Source: Heptranchias perlo (Eukaryota). Taken from it: a stretch of DNA of 64,000 nt. Location: assembly GCF_035084215.1 (NCBI RefSeq), contig NW_027139268.1:124001-188000 (forward strand), given 5' to 3'. The position numbers and the translations under genes are program-made. The notes beneath the pieces were generated by a model, which saw only the letters and a list, made by a program, of their open reading frames with translations, was not told the DNA's origin and did not search any database. This document shows positions 1 through 64,000 of the stretch, one piece after another; position 1 is the first letter of the stretch; each line of letters begins with the position of its first letter.

Positions 1-3000
1 TCCCCTCTCTCTGACTCTCCTCTCTCAGTGCCCTGTACTCCCAGTACTGGAGACTCTCCCACACTCACTCTGTCCCCCTCAGTTCTCCATTCCCCTCTCT
101 CTGACTCTCCTCTCTCAGTGCCCTGGACTCCCAGTACTGGAGACTCTCCCACACTCACTCTGTCCCCCTCAGTTCTCCATTCCCCTCTCTCTGACTCTCC
201 TCTCTCAGTGCCCTGTACTCCCAGTACTGGAGACTCTCCCACACTCACTCTGTCCCCTCAGTTCTCCATTCCCCTCTCTCTGACTCTCCTCTCTAAGTGC
301 CCTGTACTCCCAGTACTGGAGACTCTCCCACACTCACTCTGTCCCCCTCAGTTCTCCATTCCCCTCTCTCTGACTCTCCTCTCTCAGTGCCCTGTGCTCC
401 CAGTACTGGAGACTCTCCCACACTCACTCTGTCCCCTCAGTTCTCCATTCCCCTCTCTCTGACTCTCCTCTCTCAGTGCCCTGTACTCCCAGTACTGGAG
501 ACTCTCCCACACTCACTCTGTCCCCTCAGTTCTACATTCCCCTCTCTCTGACTCTCCTCTCTCAGTGCCCTGTACTCCCAGTACTGGAGACTCTCCCACA
601 CTCACTCTGTCCCCCTCAGTTCTCCATTCCCCTCTCTCTGACTCTCGTCTCTCAGTGCCCTGTACTCCCAGTACTGGAGACTCTCCCACACTCACTCTGT
701 CCCCCTCAGTTCTCCATTCCCCTCTCTCTGACTCTCCTCTCTCAGTGCCCTGTGCTCCCAGTACCGGAGACTCTCCCACACTCACTCTGTCCCCTCAGTT
801 CTCCATTCCCCTCTCTCTGACTCTCCTCTCTCAGTGCCCTGTACTCCCAGTACTGGAGACTCTCCCACACTCACTCTGTCCCCTCAGTTCTCCATTCCCC
901 TCTCTCTGACTCTCCTCTCTCAGTGCCCTGTACTCCCAGTACTGGAGACTCTCCCACACTCACTCTGTCCCCCTCAGTTCTCCATTCCCCTCTCTCTGAC
1001 TCTCCTCTCTCAGTGCCCTGTACTCCCAGTACTGGAGACTCTCCCACACTCACTCTGTCCCCCTCAGTTCTCCATTCCCCTCTCTCTGACTCTCCTCTCT
1101 CAGTGCCCTGTACTCCCAGTACTGGAGACTCTCCCACACTCACTCTGTCCCCTCAGTTCTCCATTCCCCTCTCTCTGACTCTCCTCTCTAAGTGCCCTGT
1201 ACTCCCAGTACTGGAGACTCTCCCACACTCACTCTGTCCCCCTCAGTTCTCCATTCCCCTCTCTCTGACTCTCCTCTCTCAGTGCCCTGTACTCCCAGTA
1301 CTGGAGACTCTCCCACACTCACTCTGTCCCCTCAGTTCTCCATTCCCCTCTCTCTGACTCTCCTCTCTCAGTGCCCTGTACTCCCAGTACTGGAGACTCT
1401 CCCACACTCACTCTGTCCCCTCAGTTCTCCATTCCCCTCTCTCTGACTCTCCTCTCTCAGTGCCCTGCACTCCCAGTACTGGAGACTCTCCCACACTCAC
1501 TCTGTCCCCCTCAGTTCTCCATTCCCCTCTCTCTGACTCTCCTCTCTCAGTGCCCTGTACTCCCAGTACTGGAGACTCTCCCACACTCACTCTGTCCCCT
1601 CAGTTCTCCATTCCCCTCTCTCTGACTCTCCTCTCTCAGTGCCCTGTACTCCCAGTACTGGAGACTCTCCCACACTCACTCTGTCCCCCTCAGTTCTCCA
1701 TTCCCCTCTCTCTGACTCTCCTCTCTCAGTGCCCTGTACTCCCAGTACTGGAGACTCTCCCACACTCACTCTGTCCCCTCAGTTCTCCATTCCCCTCTCT
1801 CTGACTCTCCTCTCTCAGTGCCCTGTACTCCCAGTACTGGAGACTCTCCCACACTCACTCTGTCCCCCTCAGTTCTCCATTCCCCTCTCTCTGACTCTCC
1901 TCTCTCAGTGCCCTGTACTCCCAGTACTGGAGACTCTCCCACACTCACTCTGTCCCCCTCAGTTCTCCATTCCCCTCTCTCTGACTCTCCTCTCTCAGTG
2001 CCCTGTACTCCCAGTACTGGAGACTCTCCCACACTCACTCTGTCCCCCTCAGTTCTCCATTCCCCTCTCTCTGACTCTCCTCTCTCAGTGCCCTGTGCTC
2101 CCAGTACTGGAGACTCTCCCACACTCACTCTGTCCCCTCAGTTCTCCATTCCCCTCTCTCTGACTCTCCTCTCTCAGTGCCCTGTACTCCCAGTACTGGA
2201 GACTCTCCCACACTCACTCTGTCCCCTCAGTTCTCCATTCCCCTCTCTCTGACTCTCCTCTCTCAGTGCCCTGTACTCCCAGTACTGGAGACTCTCCCAC
2301 ACTCACTCTGTCCCCCTCAGTTCTCCATTCCCCTCTCTCTGACTCTCCTCTCTCAGTGCCCTGGACTCCCAGTACTGGAGACTCTCCCACACTCACTCTG
2401 TCCCCCTCAGTTCTCCATTCCCCTCTCTCTGACTCTCCTCTCTCAGTGCCCTGTACTCCCAGTACTGGAGACTCTCCCACACTCACTCTGTCCCCTCAGT
2501 TCTCCATTCCCCTCTCTCTGACTCTCCTCTCTAAGTGCCCTGTACTCCCAGTACTGGAGACTCTCCCACACTCACTCTGTCCCCCTCAGTTCTCCATTCC
2601 CCTCTCTCTGACTCTCCTCTCTCAGTGCCCTGTACTCCCAGTACTGGAGACTCTCCCACACTCACTCTGTCCCCTCAGTTCTCCATTCCCCTCTCTCTGA
2701 CTCTCCTCTCTCAGTGCCCTGTACTCCCAGTACTGGAGACTCTCCCACACTCACTCTGTCCCCTCAGTTCTCCATTCCCCTCTCTCTGACTCTCCTCTCT
2801 CAGTGCCCTGCACTCCCAGTACTGGAGACTCTCCCACACTCACTCTGTCCCCCTCAGTTCTCCATTCCCCTCTCTCTGACTCTCCTCTCTCAGTGCCCTG
2901 TACTCCCAGTACTGGAGACTCTCCCACACTCACTCTGTCCCCTCAGTTCTCCATTCCCCTCTCTCTGACTCTCCTCTCTCAGTGCCCTGTACTCCCAGTA

Positions 3001-5658
3001 CTGGAGACTCTCCCACACTCACTCTGTCCCCCTCAGTTCTCCATTCCCCTCTCTCTGACTCTCCTCTCTCAGTGCCCTGTACTCCCAGTACTGGAGACTC
3101 TCCCACACTCACTCTGTCCCCTCAGTTCTCCATTCCCCTCTCTCTGACTCTCCTCTCTCAGTGCCCTGTACTCCCAGTACTGGAGACTCTCCCACACTCA
3201 CTCTGTCCCCCTCAGTTCTCCATTCCCCTCTCTCTGACTCTCCTCTCTCAGTGCCCTGTACTCCCAGTACTGGAGACTCTCCCACACTCACTCTGTCCCC
3301 CTCAGTTCTCCATTCCCCTCTCTCTGACTCTCCTCTCTCAGTGCCCTGTACTCCCAGTACTGGAGACTCTCCCACACTCACTCTGTCCCCCTCAGTTCTC
3401 CATTCCCCTCTCTCTGACTCTCCTCTCTCAGTGCCCTGTGCTCCCAGTACTGGAGACTCTCCCACACTCACTCTGTCCCCTCAGTTCTCCATTCCCCTCT
3501 CTCTGACTCTCCTCTCTCAGTGCCCTGTACTCCCAGTACTGGAGACTCTCCCACACTCACTCTGTCCCCTCAGTTCTACATTCCCCTCTCTCTGACTCTC
3601 CTCTCTCAGTGCCCTGTACTCCCAGTACTGGAGACTCTCCCACACTCACTCTGTCCCCCTCAGTTCTCCATTCCCCTCTCTCTGACTCTCCTCTCTCAGT
3701 GCCCTGTACTCCCAGTACTGGAGACTCTCCCACACTCACTCTGTCCCCCTCAGTTCTCCATTCCCCTCTCTCTGACTCTCCTCTCTCAGTGCCCTGTACT
3801 CCCAGTACTGGAGACTCTCCCACACTCACTCTGTCCCCTCAGTTCTCCATTCCCCTCTCTCTGACTCTCCTCTCTAAGTGCCCTGTACTCCCAGTACTGG
3901 AGACTCTCCCACACTCACTCTGTCCCCCTCAGTTCTCCATTCCCCTCTCTCTGACTCTCCTCTCTCAGTGCCCTGTACTCCCAGTACTGGAGACTCTCCC
4001 ACACTCACTCTGTCCCCTCAGTTCTCCATTCCCCTCTCTCTGACTCTCCTCTCTCAGTGCCCTGTACTCCCAGTACTGGAGACTCTCCCACACTCACTCT
4101 GTCCCCTCAGTTCTCCATTCCCCTCTCTCTGACTCTCCTCTCTCAGTGCCCTGCACTCCCAGTACTGGAGACTCTCCCACACTCACTCTGTCCCCCTCAG
4201 TTCTCCATTCCCCTCTCTCTGACTCTCCTCTCTCAGTGCCCTGTACTCCCAGTACTGGAGACTCTCCCACACTCACTCTGTCCCCTCAGTTCTCCATTCC
4301 CCTCTCTCTGACTCTCCTCTCTCAGTGCCCTGTACTCCCAGTACTGGAGACTCTCCCACACTCACTCTGTCCCCCTCAGTTCTCCATTCCCCTCTCTCTG
4401 ACTCTCCTCTCTCAGTGCCCTGTGCTCCCAGTACTGGAGACTCTCCCACACTCTATCTGTCCCCCTCAGTTCTCCATTCCCCTCTCTCTGACTCTCCTCT
4501 CTCAGTGCCCTGTACTCCCAGTACTGGAGACTCTCCCACACTCACTCTGTCCCCTCAGTTCTCCATTCCCCTCTCTCTGACTCTCCTCTCTCAGTGCCCT
4601 GTACTCCCAGTACTGGAGACTCTCCCACACTCACTCTGTCCCCTCAGTTCTCCATTCCCCTCTCTCTGACTCTCCTCTCTCAGTGCCCTGTACTCCCAGT
4701 ACTGGAGACTCTCCCACACTCACTCTGTCCCCCTCAGTTCTCCATTCCCCTCTCTCTGACTCTCCTCTCTCAGTGCCCTGTACTCCCAGTACTGGAGACT
4801 CTCCCACACTCACTCTGTCCCCCTCAGTTCTCCATTCCCCTCTCTCTGACTCTCCTCTCTCAGTGCCCTGTACTCCCAGTACTGGAGACTCTCCCACACT
4901 CACTCTGTCCCCCTCAGTTCTCCATTCCCCTCTCTCTGACTCTCCTCTCTCAGTGCCCTGTACTCCCAGTACTGGAGACTCTCCCACACTCACTCTGTCC
5001 CCCTCAGTTCTCCATTCCCCTCTCTCTGACTCTCCTCTCTCAGTGCCCTGTACTCCCAGTACTGGAGACTCTCCCACACTCACTCTGTCCCCCTCAGTTC
5101 TCCATTCCCCTCTCTCTGACTCTCCTCTCTCAGTGCCCTGTACTCCCAGTACTGGAGACTCTCCCACACTCACTCTGTCCCCCTCAGTTCTCCATTCCCC
5201 TCTCTCTGACTCTCCTCTCTCAGTGCCCTGTACTCCCAGTACTGGAGACTCTCCCACACTCACTCTGTCCCCCTCAGTTCTCCATTCCCCTCTCTCTGAC
5301 TCTCCCCTCTCAGTGCCCTGTACTCCCAGTACTGGAGACTCTCCCACACTCACTCTGTCCCCCTCAGTTCTCCATTCCCCTCTCTCTGACTCTCCCCTCT
5401 CAGTGCCCTGTACTCCCAGTACTGGAGACTCTCCCACACTCACTCTGTCCCCCTCAGTTCTCCATTCCCCTCTCTCTGACTCTCCCCTCTCAGTGCCCTG
5501 TACTCCCAGTACTGGAGACTCTCCCACACTCACTCTGTCCCCCTCAGTTCTCCATTCCCCTCTCTCTGACTCTCCTCTCTCAGTGCCCTGTACTCCCAGT
5601 ACTGGAGACTCTCCCACACTCACTCTGTCCCCTCAGTTCTCCATTCCCCTCTCTCTGA
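1..5658. repeat. 89/90-bp minisatellite array (about 63 copies in window) in the intron after the MHC TM exon
   Basis: Unit CAGTGCCCTGTACTCCCAGTACTGGAGACTCTCCCACACTCACTCTGTCCCC(C)TCAGTTCTCCATTCCCCTCTCTCTGACTCTCCTCTCT, nearly invariant; runs off the left edge. Confidence 0.99.
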
Positions 5659-5665
5659 TTCTTAC

Positions 5666-5779
5666 CTCTCCGTTGTCTTTTCCAGATGACTATTCCGATT
5701 ATCACCACTATAACAGCCAGCGCCGCAATCACTGATCCGATAATAATTCCCAGATTGGATTCCCTGTTTTCCGGTCTTT
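5666..5779 (-). CDS. MHC class I-like heavy chain, exon 5 (connecting peptide, transmembrane, basic stop-transfer)
   Basis: Acceptor tgtttcag|AA and donor AG|GTAAG; 114 nt. Encodes ERPENRESNLGIIIGSVIAALAVIVVIIGIVIWKRQRR. Confidence 0.93.
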
Positions 5780-5851
5780 CTGAAACACATTTCAATAATA
5801 TCAGGATTGTTTCTCTCTGTTCCAGGAACCATTCCCAGTTCTGTGTTGATT

Positions 5852-6336
5852 GGGGGAAATTTTAACCTAACCCACCCGTGGGGAAACTGACGAGATCGGG
5901 TGTAACGCTGGTTTTACTCCCCGCCCCGATTTTACTGCCCATTGAAGTCAGTGGTCAGTATTATTGGTCAGAATCCAGCCCATCCCATGGGTCTCCCGCC
6001 CGGTGAGTCAGGTTAACATTCCCCCCGATGTCTGTGTGTCTTTTCCTTGTCCCATCCCCAGGGTTACATTGTACAGTCCAGGAGTCAGCCTCACTGATGG
6101 TTCTCACAGATCGGTTTCTATTCTCTCTATTTATATCTTATTTCTTGACGGCAAATCATGTTTCACCAACCACAACCCGGCTTTATTTCCGGGTTTAACA
6201 TCGGTGTGTAAAAAGTCCAGGCTTCCCACTGGGAATGCAAAGTCTGAAAAATTTGCGTTCGCAACCCAAATAAACAATTATTTTCAACTCCCACCCGCCC
6301 CCAACCCACCCGTTGTTGGGGGTTAAAATCACCCCC
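5852..6336. mobile_element. Putative non-autonomous DNA transposon (Harbinger-like MITE)
   Basis: Terminal inverted repeats GGGGGAAATTTTAACC and GGTTAAAATCACCCCC (14/16 match), similar to the terminus at 18231. No TSD recognised. Confidence 0.55.
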
Positions 6337-6399
6337 AGAGAGTGGGGATAAAGGGAATGTGCTCTGATTGGTGGGATGTGAGAAGTGGTGTTCCCCAGG

Positions 6400-7130
6400 G
6401 ATCTGGACTGGGGCCTCAGCTTTTCACCATATTTATCAATGATTGGATGACGGAACAGAGTGAGTTGTATATCCAAGTTTGGAGATGACACTCAGTTAGG
6501 GGACACAGTAAAGGGACACAGACAGATTAAATGAGTGGGCAAAACTATGGCAGGTGGAGTTCAATGTGAGTCTTCGTCAGACTCCAACTGGAGAATTGTG
6601 TTCAGTTCTGGGAATCGCACCTTATGAAAGATATATTGTCCTTGGAGGGGATACAGTGCAGATTCACCAGACTGATACCGGGGCTTAGAGGGTTAAATTC
6701 TGAGGACAGGTTACAGAAACTTGGCTTGTGTTCCCTGGAATATAGAAGGGTGAGGGGTGATCTGAATGAGGTGTTTAAAATGATAAAGGGATTCGATAGG
6801 GTGGAGTCAGAGAAACTATTTTCTCTGGTGGGGAATCCAGAACGAGGGGTCACAATCTTAAAATTAGAGCCAGGCCATTTAGGAGTGAAATCAGAAAGCA
6901 CTTTTTCCACACAAAGGGGAGTGGAAATCAGGAAATCTCTCCCCAAAAGGCTGTGGGTGCTGGGAACAACTGAAAATTTCAAGACTGAGATCGATAGATG
7001 TTTGTGGGGTAAGGGAATCAAGGGATATGGATCAAAGGAGGGGAAATGGAGGAGAGGTGCAGATCAGTCATGGTCTCATTGAATGGCAGAACAGACTCAA
7101 GGGGCTGAATGGCCTACTCCTGTTCCTCTG
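6400..7130 (+). mobile_element. CR1 LINE 3' fragment (RT C-terminus and 3' UTR)
   Basis: CVQFW...KDILSLEGIQCRFTRLIPGL...RGDLNEVFKMIKG, with 3' end GGCTGAATGGCCTACTCCTGTTCCT. Confidence 0.9.
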
Positions 7131-7197
7131 TTTCATAAACACACAATGCCAGCCTTTCATATCTGTCATAATCAATATCTCACATGGACATTATCTG

Positions 7198-7285
7198 ACT
7201 CCCTCTTACACACACACCCTCTTACACACACACACACACACCCTCTTACACACACACACACACCCACACACTCCCTCTTACACAC
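7198..7285. repeat. Compound (CA)n microsatellite next to the alpha3 donor
   Basis: CCCTCTTACACACAC repeats. Confidence 0.85.
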
Positions 7286-7304
7286 TTCCAGTGCAGTTCC
7301 TTAC

Positions 7305-7583
7305 CCCACTGATAGACCTTTGCCTCTGCCAGGCTGCTGTGTTCAATTTGACAGGAGTATTGATCCTCATCCCCAGCATTTACTTCAATCTCTTTCTTGA
7401 TCTGATGGGTCCCATCGTGGTTCGGTCGAACCCCCGAGGATTGGCTCTCAGACACTCGCTCACCATTCCTTAGCCAGGTCACCTCGATGTTTACAGGGTA
7501 AAATCCAGTAACCAGGCAGGAGAGAGTGGGCGGGTTGTACTGATTATTGGGGTCACTTCTGGAGATGAATACTTCAGGCTGAA
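7305..7583 (-). CDS. MHC class I-like heavy chain, exon 4 (alpha3, C1-set Ig domain, 93 aa)
   Basis: Acceptor cctttcag|TT and donor G|GTAAG. Motifs LSCLVTGFYP, VTWLRNG, RPNHDGTHQ and YSCQIEHSSL. The intron to alpha2 is 116 bp. Confidence 0.97.
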
Positions 7584-7699
7584 CTGAAAGGGGAAAAGGA
7601 GGAAACACAAACAATAGAGAGACAGAGAATGGAATGGGATAACGGTTTCATAGATCAGAAAGTTCAATCAGAAAATGGGATAAAAACTGAAATCAATAC

Positions 7700-7975
7700 C
7701 TTTCTTTTCAAAATATTCCTTTCCAAAGTGTAAACGGGATTTTAAACGCTCAACAAGTTCTTCTTCCAAGTGCCATTTCCAATGCTTGTTCCAGGAATCA
7801 TCAGCATCCCATTTCTCCTTGGTCTTCACTGCAAGGTGATTGGTTGCGACCCATCTCATTCTGTCTGGCTCTAAACTAATATAATCCTTTCCGTCATATG
7901 CAACACTCATCGATCTCTTAATGGAGCCGTCTTCAGTGATCTCAACATTCCTTATCAATTGCAAAATGTGAATTC
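7700..7975 (-). CDS. MHC class I-like heavy chain, exon 3 (alpha2 domain, 92 aa, cysteine-free)
   Basis: Acceptor gacag|GA and donor G|GTATT; 276 nt. GIHILQ...AYDGKDYISL...W...TKEKWD...LEEELVERLKSRLHFG aligns to class I alpha2 (H93, Q96, YDGxDY, T143/K146/W147). Confidence 0.95.
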
Positions 7976-8035
7976 CTGTCAGTGACCAACCAGAAATCAA
8001 TAATCAATCATGAATGGAAAATGTCCCTTTATTGA

Positions 8036-9227
8036 GCACAGAGCTTGGTGAGAGTTGGTGAATCTGTTAAACAGAGTGACGATGGGAATTTGGTGAGAGT
8101 GGGAATTCGATGCAGATGGGGGAAGGAAGTGCGAAGTAATTTAAACCAAGTGGTAACAGTAAATAAGTAAAAACATTAAATCTCGGGAGAAAAAAATAAA
8201 ATTAATTATGTAGAGGATACCAACATTAAAGGGATCTAAATTGCATTGAATAAAAATCTGGTATACATAATTAATAAACAGGAGTAAGGGGATACTAAAC
8301 TAAAAAAATATATGTATATAAAACATAAGATATATATATCTATCTTATATTGTAAATAGACTTTTAAGTAAAATGATGGAACAGCTGAGACCCGTTGCCT
8401 ATAATACTGTGCCATGAAGCTCCTGAATTCCTCAAGTTTCCTGGACAATCACGTGTGCAGGAAGTGCCTCCAGTTGCTCAAACTCGAGCTCAGGGTTACG
8501 GGAGGCTGAGAATTTCCTGGAGCGTACGTTCCAGGAGGCGGTCATCCCGCAGCTGCAGAGAGTTCAGGAGGAGAGTAAGCGGGTGGCCATCTGGCAGGTT
8601 AGGAAGAGGCAGGCAGTGCAGGAATCCTCCGGGAGTGTGGCCACTCTCAAACCTGTTTTCAGTGGTGAATACTGGTGAGGGTGATGACACCTCGGGGGAA
8701 TACAGTCTTGAGCAAATCCACGACACCGTGGGGCAGAGGACTGCACGGTGCACAGGGGCAGAGCGGAGTGTTGAAATGCAGTGGTCATAGGGGATTCGAT
8801 AGTCAGGGGAATAGACAGGCATTTCTGCAACCGCCAACATGCGTTCCCACAGGGTGATTTAATAGAGGTGTTCAAAATCATGAAGGGTTTTGACAGATTA
8901 GAAGGAGAAACTGTTTCCAGTGGGGTCGGTAACCAGAGGACACAGATTTAAGGTGATTGGCAAAAGAACCGGAGGCAACATGAGGAAAAAATTTTTTACG
9001 CAGCGAGTTGTTCTGATCTGGAATTCACTGCCTGAAAGGGCAGTGGAAGCAAATTCAATAATAACTTTCAAAAGGGAATTGGATAAATATTTGAAGAGGA
9101 AAGATTTACAGGGCTACGGGGAAAGAGCAGGGGAGTGGAACTAATTGGAGAGCTCTTTCAAAGAGCCGGCTCAGACATGATGGGCTGAATGGCCTCCTTC
9201 TGTACTGTATCATTCTCTGATTCTATG
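8036..9227 (+). mobile_element. Internally deleted CR1 LINE (5' region and ORF1 fused to 3' end)
   Basis: CRKCLQLLKLELRV (about 8455) and the esterase-type motif VVIGDSIVRGIDRHFC (about 8780-8830) join at about 8851 to GDLIEVFKIMKG...TRGHRFKV and the CR1 tail ATTCTATG. Confidence 0.8.
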
Positions 9228-11968: not shown

Positions 11969-13504
11969 GAATGCAACGATAACCCCAAGTTTCCCTTCTC
12001 CACTACAAACCATCTTCTTAAACCCCTCTCCCCTTCCTCCTCCACCCTCAACTCCAACAACAAGTGCGAGGAGCTCACGGACTTCTTTCTCACTAAGATT
12101 GAGACCATTCGTTCAGGTGCCTCTGCCGTTTCCTTCCCTTCCCCCAGCCCACCGAGCCAAACTTCCCCTTCAGTTCCCCCCAGCCCCAGCCCTGAACTCA
12201 CATCTTTCTCTCGTTTCTATCTCCCCTTATGCCCTCTCCGAGCTCATCTTGACCATGAGACCCACCTCCTGCTCCCTCGACCCGATTCCCACCAAACTGC
12301 AGACCACCCAACTTCCCTTCCTGGCCCCCATGTTAGCTGATATTGTTAACGGTTCCATCTCCTCAGGTACTGACCCCCTCCCCTTCAAATCTGTCATCAT
12401 CACTCACTCCTCAAAAAACCCACCCTTGACCCCTCTGTCCTTACAAACTCCCGCCCCATCTCCACCCTCCCTTTCCTCTCCAAAGTCCTTGAATATGTGG
12501 TTGCCTCCCAAATCCGTGCCCATGTATGCTGATGACACCCAGTGCAGTGCATCCTGTGGATGGTACACACGACCTCATCGTCAACTCTTTCGACCCCTCC
12601 ACTGTCTCGGAATTGTCACACTGCTTGTCCGACAACTGTTACTGGGTGAGCAAAAATTTCCTCCAAATAAATACTGGGAAGACCGAAGCCATTGTCTTCA
12701 GTCCCCACCACAAACTCCGTTCCCTAGTTACCGACTCCATCCCACTCCCTGGCCACTGTCTGAGGCTGAACCAGACCGTTTGCAACCTTGACGTCCTATT
12801 TGACCCTGAGATGAGCTTCCGACCACATATCCGCTCCATCACCAAGACCGCCGACTTCCCCCTCCGTAACATCGCCCGTCTCCACCCCTCCCTCAGCTCA
12901 TCTGCTGCTGAAATCCTCATCCGTGCCTTTGTTACCTCCAGATTTGACTGCTCCAATGCTCTACTGGCCGGTCTCCCATCTTCCACCCTCCATAAACTTG
13001 AGCTCATCCAAAACTCTGCTGCCCGTATCCTAACTCGCACCAAGTCCCGTTCACCCATCACCCCCTGTTCTCGCTGACCTACACTGGCTCCCAGTCCGGG
13101 AACACCTTGATTTTAAAATTCTCATTTTGTTTTCATATCCCTCCATGGCCCTCGCCCCTCCCTATCTCTGTAACCTCCTCCTGCCCCTACAGCTCTCCGA
13201 GATCTCTGCGCCCCTCCAATTCTGGCCTCTTGCGCATCCCCGATTTTAATCGCTCCACCATTGGCGGCCGTGCCTTCAGCTGCCTCGGCCCTAAGCTCTG
13301 GAATTCCCTCCCTAAACCTCTCCACCTCTCTCTCCTCCTTTAAGACGCTCCTTAAAACCTACCTCTTTGACCAAGCTTTTGGTCACCAGCCCTAATATCT
13401 CCTTATGTGGCTCACTGTCAAATTTTGTTTGATAACATTCCTGTGAAGCACCTTGGGACGTTTTACTACATTAAAGGTGCTATATAAATGAAAGTTGTTG
13501 TTGT
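11969..13504 (+). mobile_element. L2-type LINE RT fragment with internal deletion
   Basis: LDPIPT, MYADDTQ, NTGKTEAIVF, SRFDCSNALLAGLP and LELIQNSAARILT, with 3' tail TATATAAATGAAAGTTGTTGTTGT. Confidence 0.9.
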
Positions 13505-14035
13505 AGATGGTGTTGAGCTTTTTGAGTGTTGTTGGAGTTGCACTCATCCAGGCAAATGGAGAGTATTCCATCACACTCCTGACTTGTGCCTTGTAGATGG
13601 TGAAGAGGCTTTGGGGAGTCAGGAGGTGAGTCACTCGCCGCAGAATACCCAGCCTCTGACCTGCTCTTGTAGCCATGATATTTACGTGGCTGGTCTGGTT
13701 CAGTTTCTGGTCAATGGTGACCCCCAGGATGTTGATGGTGGGGGATTCGGCGATGGTAATGCCATTGAATGTCAAGGGGAGGTGGTTAGACTCTCTCTTG
13801 TTGGAGATGGTCATTGCCTGGCACCTGTCTGGTGCAAATGTTACTTGCCACTTATCAGCCCAAGCCTGGATGTTGTCCAGGTCTTGCTGCATGCGGGCTC
13901 GGACTGCTTCATTATCTGAGGGGTTGCGAATGGAACTGAACACCGTGCAATCATCAGCGAACATCCCCATTTCTGACCTTATGATGGAGGGAAGGTCATT
14001 GATGAAGCAGCTGAAGATGGCTGGGCCTAGGACAC
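13505..14035 (-). mobile_element. CR1/L2-group LINE RT fragment
   Basis: GMFADDCTVF...WADKWQVTF...YKAQVRSVMEY. Confidence 0.9.
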
Positions 14036-14230
14036 TAAGGACATTCGTGAAACCAGTGGGATTTTACAATCCAACAGCTTCCTGGTCACTTTTACAGACA
14101 CCAGATTTTTATTCCCGATTTATTTGATTTTTTAAAACTTAATTCAAATTCACAAACTACCCCAGTGGGATTTGAACTCACCTTCTCTGGATCACTAGTC
14201 CAGTAGCATAACCACCACACTACTGTACCC
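14036..14230 (-). mobile_element. tRNA-derived SINE (5' part)
   Basis: On the minus strand GGGTACAGTAGTGTGGTGG (A box) and GAGTTCAAATCCC (B box) are followed by a non-tRNA body. Confidence 0.7.
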
Positions 14231-14234
14231 CGTT

Positions 14235-15440
14235 GTGTTACGATTGAGGGACTGTTGGTGTATTGGGGATCGGACGGATGGTTCACATGAAGCACTTTTG
14301 GACGAGCAACTCTCTAAGTGCCCTGGCAGCTCAGGGCACTGGTGGTCAACACTGCTTCTGGTTTTCATGGTCCTCCTCCTCCCTCCTCCTCCCCCCTCCT
14401 CTTCCTCCTCCCCCTCCTCCTCCTCCTCACGGTGCCCACATGGTGATAAGGGCTGGTCCCTCATGATGGCGAAGATGTGGAAAATGCAGCAGACGACCAC
14501 AAATCTGGATACCCGCTCAGGGGTTTACTGTAAAGCTCCCCTGGAACGGACCAGGCAGTGGAAACGTAGCCTGGCCACACTCACTCTCTGCTCAATGGTG
14601 TTTCTCGGGACAGCATGGGCCTCGCTGTAGGCCTGCTCTGCGCGGGTTCCTGACTGGAGCCATGAGCCATGTCCGGAGGGGATAGCCCTTGCCACCCAAT
14701 GGCCAGCCTGTGACCTGACGACCTGGTTGGAATAAAGGTGGCACAGAATAAAGGTGGCGCAGGAATGGAACTGCTGCCAGGATAGCGGGCACAGACCTGC
14801 AAGAGGCAATGCCTGTGATCGCAAAGCAGCTGTACGTTGAGGGAGTGGAATCCTTTTCTACTGAGGAATATTCCAGGGTTCTGATGGGGAGCATGCAAGG
14901 CCATGTGGGTGCAGTCAATGGCACCTTGCACCATGAGGAAGCCTGCTTTGTGGGCGAAACATTGTGCTCTCTCTCCCCCTGCTTCTGTGTGTCCATAGGG
15001 AAGGAGATTTAAGTGTTTCTCCTGGTGTAGAGCCTCGGTCACCTCCCTGATATAACGGTTGACTGCAAACCGGGAGATGTCTCTGATGTTGCCTGTTGCA
15101 GACTGAAAGAAGCCCGTGGAACGAAGGTTAAAGGCCATGGTGACCTTGACAGCCACGGGCGGTGCTGTCCATGCCCTGGTTTGAGGCTGGAGTTGGGTCT
15201 GCAGCAGGTGACGTAGCTCAGTGACAGCCTCCTTGGCCACCTCATGCATTGCTCCTCAGTGAAGTTGAGGTAGGAGAAGAGCTTCCTGATACCTGCTGTG
15301 GATATGGCCTCCTGCATAGTCCTCCCTCTTCTCCCAGCCACTCCTGCTCTCTGCTGTCTTCTTGGTTGCCCCCTCTCCTCCTCAGCCCAAAAGGCAGTCC
15401 TAAGGAGACCACCCGTGACAGCAGAGAACGGATTTGAAGG
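14235..15440 (-). pseudogene. Harbinger (HARBI1-like DDE) transposase pseudogene
   Basis: Motifs across frames: GAIDCTH, RKGFHSLNVQLLCD, ARYPGS, LGGKGYPL..WLMAPVRNP, RNTIEQ..RLRFHCL, VVCCIFH, followed by an acidic tail. Frameshifts and stops present. Confidence 0.92.
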
Positions 15441-15846: not shown

Positions 15847-16107
15847 CGGCTGTCTGGTTGGTCCCCTTCATTATTGTGTTCAGATTCTCCTTTGCCATGG
15901 CGCAGTGCTTATTCCCTTGATGTGTGAGATATTCCCAGTATTCTGCATCAAACGATTCTGTCATCCACTGTTGCCGGGAGACTGTCCGGCGGGTGTCACT
16001 GTCGTAATAGGTCACTGGAACACCATTGATCATCACCACACCGAAATATTCAGGGAGATCAGCCATGCCAGAGATGGTCACATACACTGCAGTAAAGGAA
16101 CTACTGC
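15847..16107 (-). CDS. MHC class I-like heavy chain, exon 2 (alpha1 domain, 87 aa)
   Basis: Acceptor tttaatcacag|GC and donor G|GTAAGA; 261 nt. Translation SSSFTAVYVTISGMADLPEYFGVVMINGVPVTYYDSDTRRTVSRQQWM...DAEYWE...NQTA has the YYDS, W51-like, Y59/W60 and N86 glycosylation (NQT) hallmarks of class I alpha1. Confidence 0.95.
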
Positions 16108-17084
16108 CTGTGATTAAAGGGACAGGTTAATAAATATTTACAAACGGTACCACCTGATCAAACTGAAGCCCATCCAGATAGTGACAATCTCCAATAATCC
16201 CCCACGTTATATCAATGACAGGGAATTGTGAAATAAAGGCAGTTAGTGTAATCACACCAGGGAACATCGAGCATATCTCAAAAAGCAACTGCAATCAGTA
16301 CTGAAGAAGATGAATCTTCATCCAAGACAACAGCCGGGCAGGCAGCAGAAAGTTCCTTTATGGAAAAGAAAATCTTTCTGGAAGCTGCTTATTCATGATA
16401 TATAATTTCTTGAGGGTCAAACATTAAACAAACGCCTGCAACTGGGACTCTCAGAAACCAACAGCTCATTTTAAGTTTTGTGGGCAATGAACAACGGGAA
16501 AAATTATTGTCTGAGTGTCTCCAATCCCCAGCAAAAAAGCAGATTTCTTCGTAAAACGCTGACAATCGAACAAATGGAATGAAACGCTGACTGTCAGTTA
16601 AAGAGCTAATGGTTAGCAGGTCGGGGTAGGTAGTCGGAACAGGGGAATAAATGTCGGACAATGGCCTATTGAGCCTCCACTGAGATTTCTTGTTGCCATG
16701 TTAGCTGTAACTCTAATCCCAATTCTCTCTCCTTTCTCCATATTCCGTAATGCCATTATTTCCCATGTAAACATCCCTCTCCTTGTTACACACCCAGTGG
16801 ATGTTGTTAGGACAGCAAGTCCCACATTGTCACACTGTTTGTGAGCAGCAAATGTTCTTATGTTCACTTTTACTCTGCTCAGCTCAAATGATGTCCTCTG
16901 TTNNNNNNNNNNNNNNNNNNNNNNNNNNNNNNNNNNNNNNNNNNNNNNNNNNNNNNNNNNNNNNNNNNNNNNNNNNNNNNNNNNNNNNNNNNNNNNNNNN
17001 NNNNNNNNNNNNNNNNNNNNNNNNNNNNNNNNNNNNNNNNNNNNNNNNNNNNNNNNNNNNNNNNNNNNNNNNNNNNNNNNNTAG

Positions 17085-17389: not shown

Positions 17390-17441
17390 TGGGAGAGACC
17401 CGGGAAAAACACAGGGATATGGAGAAAAGGATCAGCAGCAT
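17390..17441 (-). CDS. MHC class I-like heavy chain, exon 1 (signal peptide MLLILFSISLCFSRVSP)
   Basis: ATG at 17441, 17 hydrophobic codons plus 1 nt, then donor A|GTAAGT at 17389. Phase 1 matches the alpha1 acceptor. An N-gap (16903-17081) lies in the intervening intron. Confidence 0.8.
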
Positions 17442-17974: not shown

Positions 17975-18035
17975 GAGATTGGAAGGATGAATTCTGTACT
18001 TACCAGGAGAGACCCGGGAAAAACACAGGGATATG
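17975..18035 (-). repeat. Partial duplicate of leader exon 3' half plus splice donor
   Basis: 59/61 nt identical to 17361-17421. Donor G|GTAAGT at 18003. No in-frame ATG before the upstream TGA at 18115-18113. Confidence 0.9.
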
Positions 18036-18639
18036 TGTTGGAGAAGGAAGAAAACGTCAAGACCAGAAAGGCTGCAGGGGGATACCAATTGGTGAAGGTT
18101 TACCCTGGTGGGTCATTCCGAGGGGAATGCTCCTCCAGAAAACTTCAAAATACTGCATTGTGGTTCATTTAAACGACTTTGATTCATAGATTTTTAAATC
18201 TAAAATAAACGAGAAAACCAATCGACATTTGGGCCTTGATTTTAACCCTCCCAATGGGCAGGATAGGGTCGGGCGAGGGGGTCAAATGTTGAAAACCCGC
18301 CATGTTCTAGGCCGCTGCGATATTAATGGCGGTGATTATCGGGGCCGATGAGTCTCCCACTGTGGGGAGGTGGGAAGCTCATCAACATGTTTAAATCGGG
18401 GACCTCCGAGGAAATCAGGACCCCGACTTGACTCTAACTCCCACGGCACGGGCTTCCCGCGGGTCAGCAAGGTCGCCAGGGGAACGGTGGTGGGATTGGG
18501 CACAGGTTTATCAATGTGCTTAACGTTAAGGAGGCCCTGAATAAAGTTGGTGCACTCACAGGAGTTTCCTCTGTCCATTGCGGGCTATGGATTGGTGAGA
18601 GTAGATTGTTTGTGACTGTGACCTTGAGACTCTACACTT

Positions 18640-24681: not shown

Positions 24682-27600
24682 ATTCTCCCGCCTCTACCCT
24701 CGCCTCCTTCTCCCACCTCCACCCTCGCCTCCTTCTCCCACCTCTACCCTCGCCTCCTTCTCCCACCTCCACCCTCGCCTCCTTCTCCCACCTCTACCCT
24801 CGCCTCCTTCTCCCACCTCTACCCTCGCCTCCTTCTCCCTCCTCCACCCTCGCCTCCTTCTCCCACCTCTACCCTCGCCTCCTTCTCCCGCCTCTACCCT
24901 CGCCTCCTTCTCCCACCTCTCCCCTCGCCTCCTTCTCCCACCTCTCCCCTCGCCTCCTTCTCCCACCTCTACCCTCGCCTCCTTCTCCCACCTCTCCCCT
25001 CGCCTCCTTCTCCCACCTCTACCCTCGCCTCCTTCTCCCACCTCTACCCTCGCCTCCTTCTCCCACCTCTACCCTCGCCTCCTTCTCCCACCTCTACCCT
25101 CCCCTCCTTCTCCCACCTCTACCCTCGCCTCCTTCTCCCACCTCCACCCTCGCCTCCTTCTCACACCTCTACCCTCGTCTCCTTCTCCCACCTCCACCCT
25201 CGCCTCCTTCTCCCACCTCCACCCTCGCCTCCTTCTCCCACCTCTACGCTCGCCTCCTTCTCCCACCTCTACCCTCGCCTCCCTCTCACACCTCTACCCT
25301 CGCCTCCTTCTCCCACCTCTACCCTCGCCTCCTTCTCCCACCTCCACCCTCGCCTCCTTCTCCCACCTCCACCCTCGCCTCCTTCTCCCACCTCAACGCT
25401 CGCCTCCTTCTCCCACCTCTACCCTCGCCTCCTTCTCCCACCTCTACCCTCGCCTCCTTCTCCCTCGTCTACCCTCGCCTCCTTCTCCCACCTCTACCCT
25501 CGCCTCCTTCTCCCACCTCTACCCTCGACTCCTTCTCCCACCTCTACCCTCGACTCCTTCTCCCACCTCTACGCTCGCCTCCTTCTCACACCTCTACCCT
25601 CGCCTCCTTCTCCCACCTCTACCCTCGCCTCCTTCTCCCTCGTCTACCCTCGCCTCCTTCTCCCACCTCTACCCTCGCCTCCTTCTCCCACCTCTACCCT
25701 CGCCTCCTTCTCCCACCTCTCCCCTCGCCTCCTTCTCCCACCTCTCCCCTCGCCTCCTTCTCCCAACTCTACCCTCGCCTCCTTCTCCCACCTCTACCCT
25801 CGCCTCCTTCTCCCACCTCGACGCTCGCCTCCTTCTCCCACCTCTACCCTCGCCTCCTTCTCCCACCTCTCCCCTCGCCTCCTTCTCCCACCTCTACCCT
25901 CGCCTCCTTCTCCCACCTCTACCCTCGCCTCCTTCTCCCACCTCTACCCTCGCCTCCTTCTCCCACCTCTACCATCGCCTCCTTCTCCCACCTCTCCGCT
26001 CGCCTCCTTCTCCCACCTCTGCCCTCGCCTCCTTCTCCCACCTCTACACTCGCCTCCTGCTCCCACCTCTACCCTCGCCTCCTTCTCCCGCCTCCACCCT
26101 CGCCTCCTTCTCCCGCCTCTACCCTCGCCTCGTTCTCCCACCTCCACCCTCACCTCCTTCTCCCACCTCTACCCTCGCCTCCTTCTCCCACCTCCACCCT
26201 CGCCTCTTCTCCCACCACCACCCTCGCCTCCTTCTCCCACCTCCACCCTCGCCTCCTTCTCCCAACTCGACCCTCGCCTCCTTCTCCCACCTCTACCCTC
26301 GCCTCCTTCTCCCACCTCTACCCTCGCCTCCTTCTCCCGCCTCCACCCTCGCCTCCTTCTCCGGCCTCTACCCTCGCCTCCTTCTCCCACCTCCACCCTC
26401 GCCTCCTTCTCCCACCTCCACCCTCGCCTCCTTCTCCCGCCTCCACCCTCGCCTCCTTCTGCCGCCTCGACCCCCNNNNNNNNNNNNNNNNNNNNNNNNN
26501 NNNNNNNNNNNNNNNNNNNNNNNNNNNNNNNNNNNNNNNNNNNNNNNNNNNNNNNNNNNNNNNNNNNNNNNNNNNNNNNNNNNNNNNNNNNNNNNNNNNN
26601 NNNNNNNNNNTTCTGCCGCCTCGACCCTCGCCTCGTTCTCCAACCTCCCCCCTCGCCTCCTTCTCCCACCTCTACCCTCGCCTCCTTCTCCCGCCTTTAC
26701 CCTCGCCTCCTTCTCCCGACTCCACCCTCGCCTCATTCTCCCGCCTCCACCCTCGCCTCCTTCTCCCGCCTCTACCCTCGCCTCGTTCTCCCACCTCCAC
26801 CCTCACCTCCTTCTCCCACCTCTACCCTCGCCTCCTTCTCCCACCTCCACCCTCGCCTCTTCTCCCACCTCCACCCTCGCCTCCTTCTCCCACCTCCACC
26901 CTCGCCTCCTTCTCCCACCTCTACCCTCGCCTCCTTCTCCCGCCTCCACCCTCGCCTCCTTCTCCCGCCTCCACCCTCGCCTCCTTCTCCCACCTCTACC
27001 CTCGCCTCCTTCTCCCACCTCCACCCTCGCCTCCTTCTCCCACCTCCACCCTCGCCTCCTTCTCCCGCCTCCACCCTCGCCTCCTTCTGCCGCCTCTACC
27101 CTCGCCTCGTTCTCCCACCTCCCCCCTCGCCTCCTTCTCCCACCTCTCCCCTCGCCTCCTTCTCCCACCTCTACGCTAGCCTCCTTCTCCCACCTCTACC
27201 CTCGCCTCCTTCTCCCACCTCCACCCTCGCCTCCTTCTCCCACCTCCACCCTCGCATCCTTCTCCCGCCTCCACCCTCGCCTCCTTCTGCCGCCTCTACC
27301 CTCGCCTCGTTCTCCCACCTCCCCCCTCGCCTCCTTCTCCCACCTCTCCCCTCGCCTCCTTCTCCCACCTCCACCCTCGCCTCCTTCTCCCACCTCCACC
27401 CTCGCCTCCTTCTCCCGCCTCCACCCTCGCCTCCTTCTCCCACCTCTCCCCTCGCCTCCTTCTCCCACCTCTACCCTCGCCTCCTTCTCCCACCTCTACC
27501 CTCTCCTCCTTCTCCCACCTCTCCCCTCGCCTCCTTCTCCCACCTCTACGCTCGCCTCCTTCTCAATCCTCTACCGTCGCCTCCTTCTCCGACCTCTACC

Positions 27601-57015: not shown

Positions 57016-57034
57016 TGGGGGTGTTACTGTCCAT

Positions 57035-63000: not shown

Positions 63001-64000
63001 AACAGTGCAGCGCTCCCTCAGTACTGCCCCTCCGACAGTGCAGCACTCCCTCAGTACTGCCCCTCCGACAGTGCAGCACTCCCTCAGTACTGGCCCTTCA
63101 ACAGTGCAGCACTCCCTCAGTACTGCCCCTCTGGCAGTGCAGCACTCCCTCAGTACTGCCCCTCTGACAGTGCAGCACTCCCTCAGTACTGCCCATCCGA
63201 CAGTGCAGCACTCCCTCAGTACTGCCCCTCCGACAGTGCAGCACTCCCTCAATACTGCCCCTCCGACAGTGCAGCACTCCCTCATTACTGCCCCTCTCAC
63301 AGTGCAGCACTCCCTCAGTACTGCCCCTCCGACAGTGCAGCACTCCCTCAGTACTGCCCCTCCGACAGTGCAGCACTCCCTCAGTACTGGCCCTTCAACA
63401 GTGCAGCGCTCCCTCAGTACTGCCCCTCCGACAGTGCAGCACTCCCTCAGTACTGCCCCTCCGACAGTGCAGCACTCCCTCAGTACTGGCCCTTCAACAG
63501 TGCAGCACTCCCTCAGTACTGCCCCTCTGACAGTGCAGCACTCCCTCAGTACTGCCCCTCTGACAGTGCAGCACTCCCTCAGTACTGCCCCTCCCACAGT
63601 GCTCTTTCCCTCAGTACTGCCCCTCCCACAGTGCTCTTTCCCTCAGTACTGCCCCTCCCACAGTGCTCTCTCCCTCAGTACTGCCCCTCCGACAGTGCAG
63701 CACTCCCTCAGTACTGGCCCTTCAACAGTGCAGCGCTCCCTCAGTACTGCCCCTCCGACAGTGCAGCACTCCCTCAGTACTGGCCCTTCAACAGTGCAGC
63801 ACTCCCTCAGTACTGCCCCTCTGGCAGTGCAGCACTCCCTCAATACTGCCCCTCCGACAGTGCAGCACTCCCTCATTACTGCCCCTCTCACAGTGCAGCA
63901 CTCCCTCAGTACTGCCCCTCCGACAGTGCAGCACTCCCTCAGTACTGCCCCTCCGACAGTGCAGCACTCCCTCAGTACTGGCCCTTCAACAGTGCAGCGC
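57035..64000. repeat. 33-bp minisatellite (about 210 copies in window)
   Basis: Unit ACAGTGCAGCACTCCCTCAGTACTGCCCCTCYG; runs off the right edge. Confidence 0.99.

What the first reader, a model, noticed from the sequence alone, without database searches (positions are those of the whole stretch)
7700..7975. Apparently intact MHC class I heavy chain lacking the alpha2 disulfide (C101->V, C164->L)
Seen: the alpha2 exon contains no cysteine. By manual alignment (HLA numbering) H93-ILQLIRN-V101 and H159-LEEE-L164 show both Cys replaced by aliphatic residues. Known: the C101-C164 bond is near-invariant in class I. Inference: a paired hydrophobic replacement, in a gene with five open exons and canonical splice sites, suggests a stable lineage trait rather than decay. 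Beta2m-contact residues (W60, Q96, D119/G120, D122) are retained. This is a candidate divergent non-classical lineage or sublineage; I cannot tell from sequence alone whether it belongs to a described shark lineage (UBA/UCA/UDA/UEA/UFA).
Basis: partly seen in the sequence, partly recalled or inferred. Interest (0 to 1): 0.8.

Follow-up and report, generated by a model that had tools for sequence, protein, structure and literature searches.

The report
Shark class I gene without alpha2 disulfide
This is an intact, transcribed non-classical MHC class I gene of a sevengill shark that belongs to a large shark-only gene family in which the usual alpha2 disulfide bond was lost long ago, so the missing cysteines are a family trait and not decay.

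Summary
Window 7700-7975 (minus strand) is the alpha2 exon of a class I heavy-chain gene. It has no cysteine: V sits at the C101 position and L at the C164 position.

The five exons in the window are open and have GT..AG borders. They are 100% identical to a RefSeq model of Heptranchias perlo, P0164, [quoted passage not shown].

The trait is family-wide. In 87 alpha2 domains from 13 shark species, 0 keep C101 and 9 keep C164. Of 151 other class I alpha2 domains, 145 keep both cysteines and none lacks both. The family is one clade (SH-aLRT 98) and contains no ray or chimaera.

The window gene lies in a 12-species sublineage with L164 fixed and a strongly conserved alpha1. RNA-derived contigs carry the alpha2-alpha3 and alpha3-TM splices.

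The family is most likely the published multigene shark lineage UEA. I could not confirm this by sequence because the papers are not held.

The scan noted the same trait in paralogs 25 kb before and 45 kb beyond this window (s1-883214, s1-883033).

Verdict: real and functional-looking, but an annotated member of a known kind. Interest is modest.

The parts
17390..17441 (-). Leader exon, coding part (MLLILFSISLCFSRVSP plus 1 base; donor GTAAGT, phase 1)
   Evidence: 100% match to P0164 residues 1-18
15847..16107 (-). Alpha1 exon (86 full codons). Has N-Q-T at the N86 site and one unpaired Cys in the alpha1 helix.
   Evidence: Pfam MHC_I E 1.8e-7; 100% match to P0164; sequence
7700..7975 (-). 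Alpha2 exon (the finding): 91 full codons, no cysteine
   Evidence: Pfam MHC_I E 3.7e-16; PDB alignments; the 91 full codons are identical to P0164 residues 106-196
7944..7946 (-). Codon GTT = V at the C101 position
   Evidence: family has V 80/87 and Cys 0/87
7755..7757 (-). Codon CTT = L at the C164 position
   Evidence: family has L 30, F 21, C 9 of 87; L in 17/17 rows of the sublineage
7305..7583 (-). Alpha3 exon, Ig C1-set domain with both cysteines
   Evidence: Pfam C1-set E 9e-19; spliced to alpha2 and to TM in RNA-derived contigs of 4/4 runs
5666..5779 (-). Connecting-peptide and transmembrane exon (donor gtaaga). The next, cytoplasmic exon lies outside the window.
   Evidence: The loose end at 5666 in 4/4 runs reads on into the cytoplasmic-tail sequence of P0164.
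1..5662 (.). 90-bp satellite (63 copies, 98% matches) that fills the intron after the TM exon up to the window's start
18005..18055 (-). Decayed second copy of the leader exon. It keeps the GTAAGT donor; I saw no ATG in the stretch aligned to the leader.
   Evidence: 65% identity to P0164 residues 1-17

Best explanation
The exon is part of an intact, transcribed non-classical MHC class I heavy-chain gene of the sharpnose sevengill shark. The gene is already annotated in RefSeq. It belongs to a shark-restricted multigene class Ib family, most likely the lineage published as UEA. The common ancestor of that family lost C101, a single-base step from TGT to GTT, so the alpha2 disulfide has been absent ever since. 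Position 164 then became free to vary. The window's gene sits in a low-copy sublineage shared by 12 shark species, in which V/I101, L164 and R171 are fixed and alpha1 is strongly conserved. Inferred mechanism: the aliphatic V/L pair packs between the sheet floor and the alpha2 helix where the disulfide used to be. The chain still folds as class I, pairs with beta2m and is membrane-anchored. With only 4 of 8 peptide-terminus anchors left, it does not hold peptides in the classical way. It probably presents a conserved non-classical ligand, or acts itself as a ligand for innate-like T or NK-type receptors.
For: Shown by calls:
- Gene structure and open exons.
- 100% identity of the five exons to RefSeq model P0164.
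- Cysteine counts: C101 in 0/87 and C164 in 9/87 family alpha2 domains, against both cysteines in 145/151 other class I domains. In the named subset the others have 17/17.
- The family plus the window is separated from 17 other shark, chimaera and lungfish class I sequences with SH-aLRT 98 in alpha2 and 99 in alpha1.
- Family hits come from 13 shark species and from no ray or chimaera.
- Sublineage of 20 rows with SH-aLRT 99. L164 in 17/17 rows that have an alpha2.
- Alpha1 identity is 80-97% among six galeomorph members. The window's alpha1 is 59-76% identical to 12 sublineage members but only 56-57% to its own genome's paralogs.
- Spliced joints 7583>7700 and 5779>7305 in 4/4 runs, with zero depth in the intron bin 7616-7699. 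In run X1, all depth (152) at 7900-7907 carries the window's own letters.
- AlphaFold model: 26 of the 27 ten-residue blocks over residues 21-290 have pLDDT 82-97, and one has 78.
- Best structural matches are chicken BF2 and shark class I, TM-score 0.85-0.87 on the target.
- Beta2m contacts, the N86 site and the alpha3 cysteines are conserved.
Inferred: the packing role of V/L, beta2m pairing, the kind of ligand, and the codon path.
Against: - No published UEA sequence could be compared, so the lineage name rests on fit and not on identity.
- No nurse-shark protein named for this lineage appeared among the 124 hits.
- The abundant alpha2 contigs over 7786-7956 carry 2-6 differences. These translate to the R-F-G motif that paralog P0171 has where the window has S-V-A. 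Most of the RNA signal therefore comes from paralogs.
- Gene-specific expression rests on one unlisted X1 contig and on two 341-base contigs of depth 7-10.
- All four runs are one sample, and their RNA status is a guess by the tool. It is supported here only by the spliced joints.
- No dN/dS could be computed because no paralog DNA could be fetched.
- The model was made without beta2m and no coordinates were available, so the V101-L164 contact was not measured.
- Nothing here tests ligand binding.
Confidence: 0.8

Rival explanations
1. It is a member of a shark class I lineage that nobody has described (not UEA, UCA, UDA, UBA, UFA or UGA). The missing disulfide would then be a new defining character.
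For: No text in the searchable library mentions a shark class I lineage without the alpha2 disulfide (searches; passages read). The only nurse-shark protein named 'nonclassical' among the hits (P0255) falls outside the family, together with a chimaera sequence.
Against: PMC10751288 names UEA as the multicopy class Ib family of elasmobranchs, next to single-copy UDA and a separate UBA cluster. This family has 2 to 18 90%-identity clusters per species in 13 species. The UAA-like group with both cysteines, which includes a Heterodontus francisci cluster of 39 member sequences, fits UBA better. A family this large in RefSeq genomes is unlikely to have been missed by authors who surveyed these genomes. 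The two UEA/UDA papers are not held, so absence from the library is weak evidence.
Confidence: 0.12
2. It is a decaying or non-functional copy (pseudogene) in which the cysteines were lost by drift.
For: Four of the eight peptide-terminus anchors are changed. A 7.9-kb transposon-filled intron separates alpha1 from alpha2. Most RNA signal on alpha2 comes from paralogs.
Against: All five exons are open with canonical splice sites. The same V/L state is kept in orthologues of 12 species. The window's alpha2 is 67-80% identical to sublineage members of other shark orders. Family-specific invariant residues exist: alpha2 exon positions W41, W55, N62 and W65 are each 87/87. There is a RefSeq model with isoforms. 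Contigs with the window's own letters exist. The predicted fold is confident.
Confidence: 0.05
3. It belongs to the CD1-like shark lineages UFA or UGA, whose crystal structures may be PDB 9ch4 and 8gm8.
For: The alpha1 exon's best PDB match is 9ch4_A (E 1.9e-11). 9ch4_A is also the best class I chain for alpha3 that carries no fused beta2m (70.4 bits). The review PMC12562908 says UFA and UGA are single- or low-copy shark genes with solved structures.
Against: 9ch4_A is not among the best 60 matches for the alpha2 exon. With full-length P0001 it ranks 31st (E 6e-44, against 7e-51 for the best). That is ordinary class I distance. The link between 9ch4/8gm8 and UFA/UGA is my guess; no call shows it (one search found nothing). 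The family is multicopy, not single-copy.
Confidence: 0.03

Closest known systems
Shark non-classical class I lineage UEA (Almeida et al., J Immunol 2021, recalled; named 'multicopy' in PMC10751288, and 'expanded' and older than UBA in PMC12562908)
   Same: Multigene, with 2-18 clusters per species. Found only in sharks among the hits. Far from UAA, at 39% identity or less. Classical peptide anchors are partly replaced, often by hydrophobic residues: Y7 to V/G/A and Y59 to F in 44/94. Falls into sublineages.
   Different: Nothing was shown to differ. Identity with published UEA sequences could not be tested. I could not establish whether the UEA paper reports the missing alpha2 disulfide, because the paper and its supplement were not available.
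Classical shark class I UAA (solved structure 6lup; Triakis scyllium sequences P0256, P0258, P0070)
   Same: Same exon plan, same fold (TM-score 0.87 to 6lup), same beta2m contacts, same N86 site and same alpha3 cysteines.
   Different: UAA keeps C101-C164 and all the terminus anchors. The window gene has V101 and L164, and Y7>A, R84>G, Y159>H, Y171>R. Identity to P0001 is 33-35% overall; alpha2 identity to the window is 37-40%.
Conserved monomorphic class Ib molecules such as MR1 and CD1d (comparison by behaviour only)
   Same: A low-copy sublineage whose ligand-binding alpha1 domain is as conserved as alpha3 or more so in most pairs across orders (alpha1 80-97%, alpha3 82-95%).
   Different: No sequence relationship beyond general class I. 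MR1 chains score like other class I chains. MR1 and CD1 keep the alpha2 disulfide (recalled). No ligand is known here.
Xenopus XNC (mhc1-uba) multigene class Ib family
   Same: A large class Ib family with old sublineages and altered anchor residues (PMC12562908, passages).
   Different: An independent amphibian expansion. Nothing I read says that XNC lacks the alpha2 disulfide.

Membership tests
MHC class I heavy chain | Alpha1 and alpha2 domains matching the MHC_I profile | tested here: met
   PF00129: E 1.8e-7 for alpha1 and 3.7e-16 for alpha2, both above the curated cut-off
MHC class I heavy chain | Alpha3 Ig C1-set domain with its cysteine pair, followed by a transmembrane segment | tested here: met
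   PF07654 E 9e-19. Cysteines at alpha3 exon positions 22 and 77. Hydrophobic TM exon.
MHC class I heavy chain | Alpha2 intradomain disulfide C101-C164 | tested here: not met
   V and L at the two positions. This is the point of the finding. It holds for the whole family: C101 in 0/87.
MHC class I heavy chain | Beta2m-contact residues (W60, Q96, D119, G120, D122) and the N86 glycosylation site | tested here: met
   All are present in the window and conserved in 85-94 of 87-94 family rows. Actual pairing with beta2m is not testable here.
Classical (peptide-presenting) class I | Eight conserved residues that hold the peptide termini (Y7, Y59, Y/R84, T143, K146, W147, Y159, Y171) | tested here: not met
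   The window has A, Y, G, T, K, W, H, R, so 4 of 8 are kept. The other shark class I rows keep them in 10-17 of 14-17 rows per position.
Shark UEA lineage | Multicopy family | tested here: met
   2 to 18 clusters at 90% identity per species in 13 species. At least 3 in Heptranchias perlo. The scan noted paralogs 25 kb and 45 kb away (not checked by me). 'UEA (multicopy)' is from PMC10751288.
Shark UEA lineage | Present in sharks, absent from rays and chimaeras (feature recalled from the 2021 abstract) | tested here: met
   Every hit named for a species at 50% identity or more is from a shark. The only chimaera and lungfish hits are at 30% or less, and there is no batoid. The search covers only proteins of 220-698 aa.
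Shark UEA lineage | Sequence clusters with the published UEA sequences | not testable with these tools
   The papers PMC8454915 and PMC7002201 are not held. Supplements are closed. No hit carries the name UEA.
Shark UEA lineage | Linked to the MHC, in the class Ib cluster near UDA, brd2 and beta2m | not testable with these tools
   The window holds no other gene. The scan's notes give no beta2m or brd2 on this piece.
Shark UBA lineage (derived from UAA) | Close to UAA | tested here: not met
   The family is a separate clade (SH-aLRT 98/99) at 39% identity or less to the UAA-like group, which keeps both cysteines.
Shark UDA lineage (single copy, also in chimaeras) | Clusters with the single-copy group that includes a chimaera sequence | tested here: not met
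   That group (P0249, P0250, P0251, P0252, P0255, P0257 and Callorhinchus P0263) is a separate clade with both cysteines. Calling it UDA is my inference.

The most novel reading that the evidence does not exclude
The window gene would be the sevengill-shark orthologue of a deeply conserved, low-copy class Ib gene found in all major shark orders. Its ligand-binding alpha1 domain (80-97% identical among galeomorph orders) has been held by selection for a fixed, non-peptide ligand or receptor. A disulfide-free, more flexible alpha2 helix and a conserved free cysteine in the alpha1 helix would be part of how it works. That would make it a shark counterpart in behaviour to MR1 or CD1d that has not been singled out within UEA.
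Probability: 0.2. Interest if true: 0.65.

Novelty: new member of a known kind. Interest (0 to 1): 0.35.

Why it matters
The C101-C164 bond ties the alpha2 helix to the floor of the groove in nearly all class I and class I-like molecules. A family of roughly 100 sequence clusters that has done without it since before the modern shark orders split shows that the fold does not need it. (The timing is my inference from the presence of the family in Hexanchiformes, Pristiophoriformes and four galeomorph orders.) The family is a natural test case for how groove flexibility and chaperone-dependent quality control work without the bond. The practical gain from this check is smaller.

Tried and rejected
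- Compensating disulfide: rejected. The two extra alpha1 cysteines seen in the family (exon position 41 in 34/94 rows, position 68 in 12/94 rows, the window among them) never occur together in 77 proteins. They also do not track C164.
- Membership of the 9ch4 lineage: considered because of the alpha1 and alpha3 matches. Rejected because the alpha2 exon and full-length P0001 do not rank 9ch4_A near the top. A paper search for '9CH4' found only unrelated papers.
- Literature on UEA: the two J Immunol papers could not be opened by PMC id, DOI or PubMed id. Passages in PMC10751288, PMC12562908, PMC8010645, PMC9586880, PMC11958417, PMC8713811, PMC4364491 and PMC6769792 say nothing about alpha2 cysteines of shark lineages. 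Supplements are closed. Those of PMC10751288 and of the UEA paper may hold the gene lists and sequences that would settle the name.
- dN/dS among paralogues: not possible.
- Synteny: the scan's notes gave no beta2m or brd2 on this piece.
- A second homologous-protein search for nurse-shark members: judged not worth its cost. The first search already listed 120 of 124 hits.
Each exon was searched on its own. For full-length work I used the natural RefSeq protein P0164, which a tool returned.

Full report
**What is at the coordinates**

Window 7700-7975 read on the minus strand is an exon. It is bounded by an AG acceptor (...ctgacag|GA) and a GT donor (AAAG|gtattg). Its 91 full codons hold no cysteine. 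They match the second half of the Pfam MHC_I profile (positions 93-177, E 3.7e-16).

In phmmer alignments to solved class I chains, the query's V lies under the Cys of 'ygCel' (C101). The query's L lies under the Cys of 'eetCv' (C164). The codons are GTT at 7946-7944 and CTT at 7757-7755.

**The gene**

Four more open exons lie on the same strand, all in phase 1 with GT..AG borders:
- a leader, coding part 17390-17441 (MLLILFSISLCFSRVSP, donor GTAAGT);
- alpha1, 15847-16107 (MHC_I E 1.8e-7);
- alpha3, 7305-7583 (C1-set E 9e-19);
- a connecting-peptide and transmembrane exon, 5666-5779.

Intron 1 contains an assembly gap (16903-17081), which I left alone. Intron 2 is 7.9 kb and full of repeat-derived open frames. 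The intron after the TM exon is a 90-bp satellite that runs to the window's start. The cytoplasmic exons are outside the window.

Each was searched on its own.

**It is already annotated**

A HMMER search of 1.84 billion representatives with the alpha2 exon found 437 proteins at E 0.001 or better. A small group lay far above the rest. The best single-gene hits are RefSeq models from horn shark, basking shark and bamboo shark.

A follow-up search with the horn-shark protein P0001 listed 120 of 124 hits. One of them, P0164, is 'class I histocompatibility antigen, F10 alpha chain-like isoform X3 [Heptranchias perlo]'. Its leader and alpha1 segments match the window at 100% by tblastn. The alpha2 and alpha3 full codons are identical to it. 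The lower tblastn figures on the alpha2, alpha3 and TM pieces come from alignment run-over into the introns. The window is therefore from that species or from an identical sequence.

**The missing disulfide is a family trait**

I cut every alpha2 domain out of the 263 proteins fetched. This gave 296 domains in 257 proteins. I dropped the 58 domains that did not span query positions 8-80, which left 238.

The identities to the window fall into two blocks with nothing between: 87 domains at 57-100% and 151 domains at 24-43%.

- In the first block, none of 87 has Cys at position 101. Position 164 is Cys in 9, so 78 lack both.
- In the second block, 145 of 151 have both cysteines, 6 lack one and none lacks both.

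On the species-named subset, position 101 is V 80, A 3, I 2 (the two remaining rows read L). Position 164 is L 30, F 21, C 9, and the rest are Y, G, S, D, H, W, T or V. All 17 other shark, chimaera and lungfish class I rows have C and C. G100 is also lost in the family: S 33, T 32, I 12 against G in 17/17.

An inference from the genetic code: GTT is one step from TGT. F, Y, S, G and W are one step from a Cys codon, and CTT is two steps away through TTT. This fits an early loss of C101, followed by free drift at position 164.

**One clade, sharks only**

On an alpha2 tree of 105 rows, the 87 family rows plus the window are separated from the 17 others with SH-aLRT 98. On alpha1 (109 rows) the split has support 99. 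On alpha3 (112 rows) it has support 82. These are quick trees on about 90 columns, and most inner forks are unresolved.

The family hits come from 13 shark species: Heptranchias, Pristiophorus, Heterodontus, two Scyliorhinus, Mustelus, Carcharodon, Cetorhinus, two Chiloscyllium, Hemiscyllium, Stegostoma and Rhincodon. Each has 2 to 18 clusters at 90% identity. No ray, skate or chimaera appears at 50% identity or more. The only chimaera and lungfish hits are at 30% or less. That search sees only proteins of 220-698 residues.

**A conserved sublineage**

On the alpha1 tree the window sits in a set of 20 rows with support 99. Several of the rows are isoforms. The set draws on 12 species. Of the 17 rows that have an alpha2, all 17 have L164 and R171. 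Sixteen have V101 and one has I101.

Among six galeomorph members, alpha1 identity is 80-97%, alpha2 75-89% and alpha3 82-95%. In most pairs the ligand-binding domain is thus as well kept as the Ig domain.

The window's alpha1 is 59-76% identical to 12 members of this set, but only 56-57% to the two other Heptranchias genes. Its alpha3 is 99-100% identical to those paralogues and 77-85% to the orthologues. Species labels change 50 times on the alpha1 tree and 22 times on the alpha3 tree. This is the familiar class I picture: old trans-species lineages in the groove domains, and homogenisation of alpha3 within a genome.

**Other sequence features**

- Of the eight residues that hold peptide termini, the window keeps Y59, T143, K146 and W147. 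It has A, G, H and R at positions 7, 84, 159 and 171.
- The alpha2 helix carries tryptophans specific to the family: exon position 61 in 85/87 rows and position 65 in 87/87.
- The window has one unpaired Cys in the alpha1 helix. It is shared by 12 of 94 family rows. It is never combined with the other common extra Cys (34 of 94), so no substitute disulfide exists.

**Expression**

Four runs of one sample of a coded organism A hold part of the stretch. I laid them on 5600-8100. All four show contigs that skip 7583>7700 and 5779>7305, with CT..AC ends, which is GT..AG on the gene's strand. Depth is zero in the intron bin 7616-7699. All four also show a loose end at 5666 whose reverse complement reads into the cytoplasmic tail of P0164.

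The tool only guesses that these runs are RNA. The spliced joints are what show it.

Against gene-specific expression: the abundant contigs over 7786-7956 carry 2-6 differences. I translated these by hand to the R-F-G motif that paralog P0171 has where the window has S-V-A. Alpha3 and TM are shared with paralogues.

For gene-specific expression: in run X1 all depth (152) at 7900-7907 shows the window's own letters. Two 341-base contigs (depth 7 and 10) match 7927-7976 without a difference and run on upstream beyond the laid stretch.

The family is therefore clearly expressed and correctly spliced. Expression of this copy is likely but thinly shown.

**Structure**

AlphaFold2 was run on P0164 with a 76-row alignment. 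It gave mean pLDDT 79. Of the 27 ten-residue blocks over residues 21-290, 26 score 82-97 and one scores 78. The secondary-structure order is that of class I. The cytoplasmic tail from about residue 330 is disordered.

Foldseek puts chicken BF2 and the shark class I structure 6lup on top, with TM-scores of 0.85-0.87 on the target. No coordinates were given to me, so the V101-L164 contact is inferred, not measured. No structure of this family exists in the PDB copy searched: the best sequence match to P0001 shows about 33% identity in the Foldseek table.

**Which published lineage**

PMC10751288 (sections read) says elasmobranch class Ib genes comprise single-copy UDA and multicopy UEA in one cluster, with multicopy UBA in another. 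PMC12562908 (passages) adds that UBA derives from UAA, that UEA is more ancient, and that UDA, UFA and UGA are single-copy.

In my trees the single-copy group that includes a chimaera sequence fits UDA. The UAA-like group with both cysteines fits UBA. This large, distant, shark-only family fits UEA.

I recall the abstract of Almeida et al. (J Immunol 2021) describing UEA as a very large shark-only family with a hydrophobic groove, lost anchor residues and three sublineages. I saw that paper only as a citation. I do not know whether it reports the missing alpha2 cysteines. Seven of my eight literature searches dealt with shark or fish class I; none of them, and no passage I read, turned up a statement on this.

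**Verdict**

The 'paired' replacement holds only within the sublineage.

The gene is not new: it is a RefSeq model and a member of a large family that is almost certainly the described UEA lineage. The scan's first readers noted the same trait in neighbours 25 kb before and 45 kb beyond the window (s1-883214, s1-883033). I did not check those loci, but two other Heptranchias models (P0171, P0169) do lack C101.

What may be worth a specialist's time is the 12-species sublineage with its conserved alpha1.

Noticed in passing
window 18005-18055 (minus strand): A second, decayed copy of the leader exon about 600 bp upstream of the real one. It keeps the GTAAGT donor; I saw no ATG in the aligned stretch. 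It is 65% identical to P0164 residues 1-17. A first-reader note on another piece of this genome describes arrays of such promoter-plus-leader cassettes (s1-883217).
   Followed up: partly
window 1-5662: A 90-bp satellite (63 copies, 98% matches) begins 4 bases after the TM exon and fills the following intron to the window's edge. If the TM donor were skipped, the reading frame would run about 29 codons into it before a stop. RNA-derived contigs cover 5600-5683 at depth 151-809.
   Followed up: partly
window 7028-7195: In the alpha3-TM intron, RNA-derived contig depth is 37,000-96,000, against about 100-2,400 on the exons. This presumably marks a very highly expressed dispersed repeat family.
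   Followed up: no
window 24677-45264; also 50356-53097 and 57025-63998: A 20.6-kb array of a 25-bp C-rich unit (824 copies, 92% matches) with GC skew down to -0.87. There are further arrays of 38-bp and 33-bp units. Well over half of the window is satellite.
   Followed up: no
window 13395-14063 and 14584-15255 (minus strand): Long open frames in the 7.9-kb alpha1-alpha2 intron that look transposon-derived. They were not searched against any family library.
   Followed up: no
proteins P0171 and P0169 (Heptranchias perlo paralogues) against window exons: The paralogues share alpha3 (99-100%) and, for P0171, the TM exon (97%) with the window gene. Their alpha1 is only 56-57% identical, which suggests homogenisation of the 3' exons within the genome. 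P0169 keeps C164 as a lone cysteine. It ends by reading through the alpha3 donor, which suggests a soluble isoform.
   Followed up: partly
PDB chain 9ch4_A ('Ig-like domain-containing protein', 268 aa): It is the best PDB match of the alpha1 exon (E 1.9e-11 over residues 7-63). It is also the best match of alpha3 among class I chains without a fused beta2m. It is not among the best 60 for alpha2. It may be one of the shark CD1-like molecules mentioned in PMC12562908; no paper naming it was found.
   Followed up: partly
family alignment, alpha1 exon positions 41 and 68: Two mutually exclusive unpaired cysteines recur in the family: 34/94 rows at position 41, in the loop before the alpha1 helix, and 12/94 rows at position 68, on the helix (the window has the latter). 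They recall the free cysteines of HLA-G and HLA-B27 that make disulfide-linked dimers (recalled). The teleost paper PMC4364491 discusses C36/C67.
   Followed up: partly
window 16903-17081 and 26476-26610: Two runs of N. The first lies in intron 1 of the gene. Both were left as they are.
   Followed up: no
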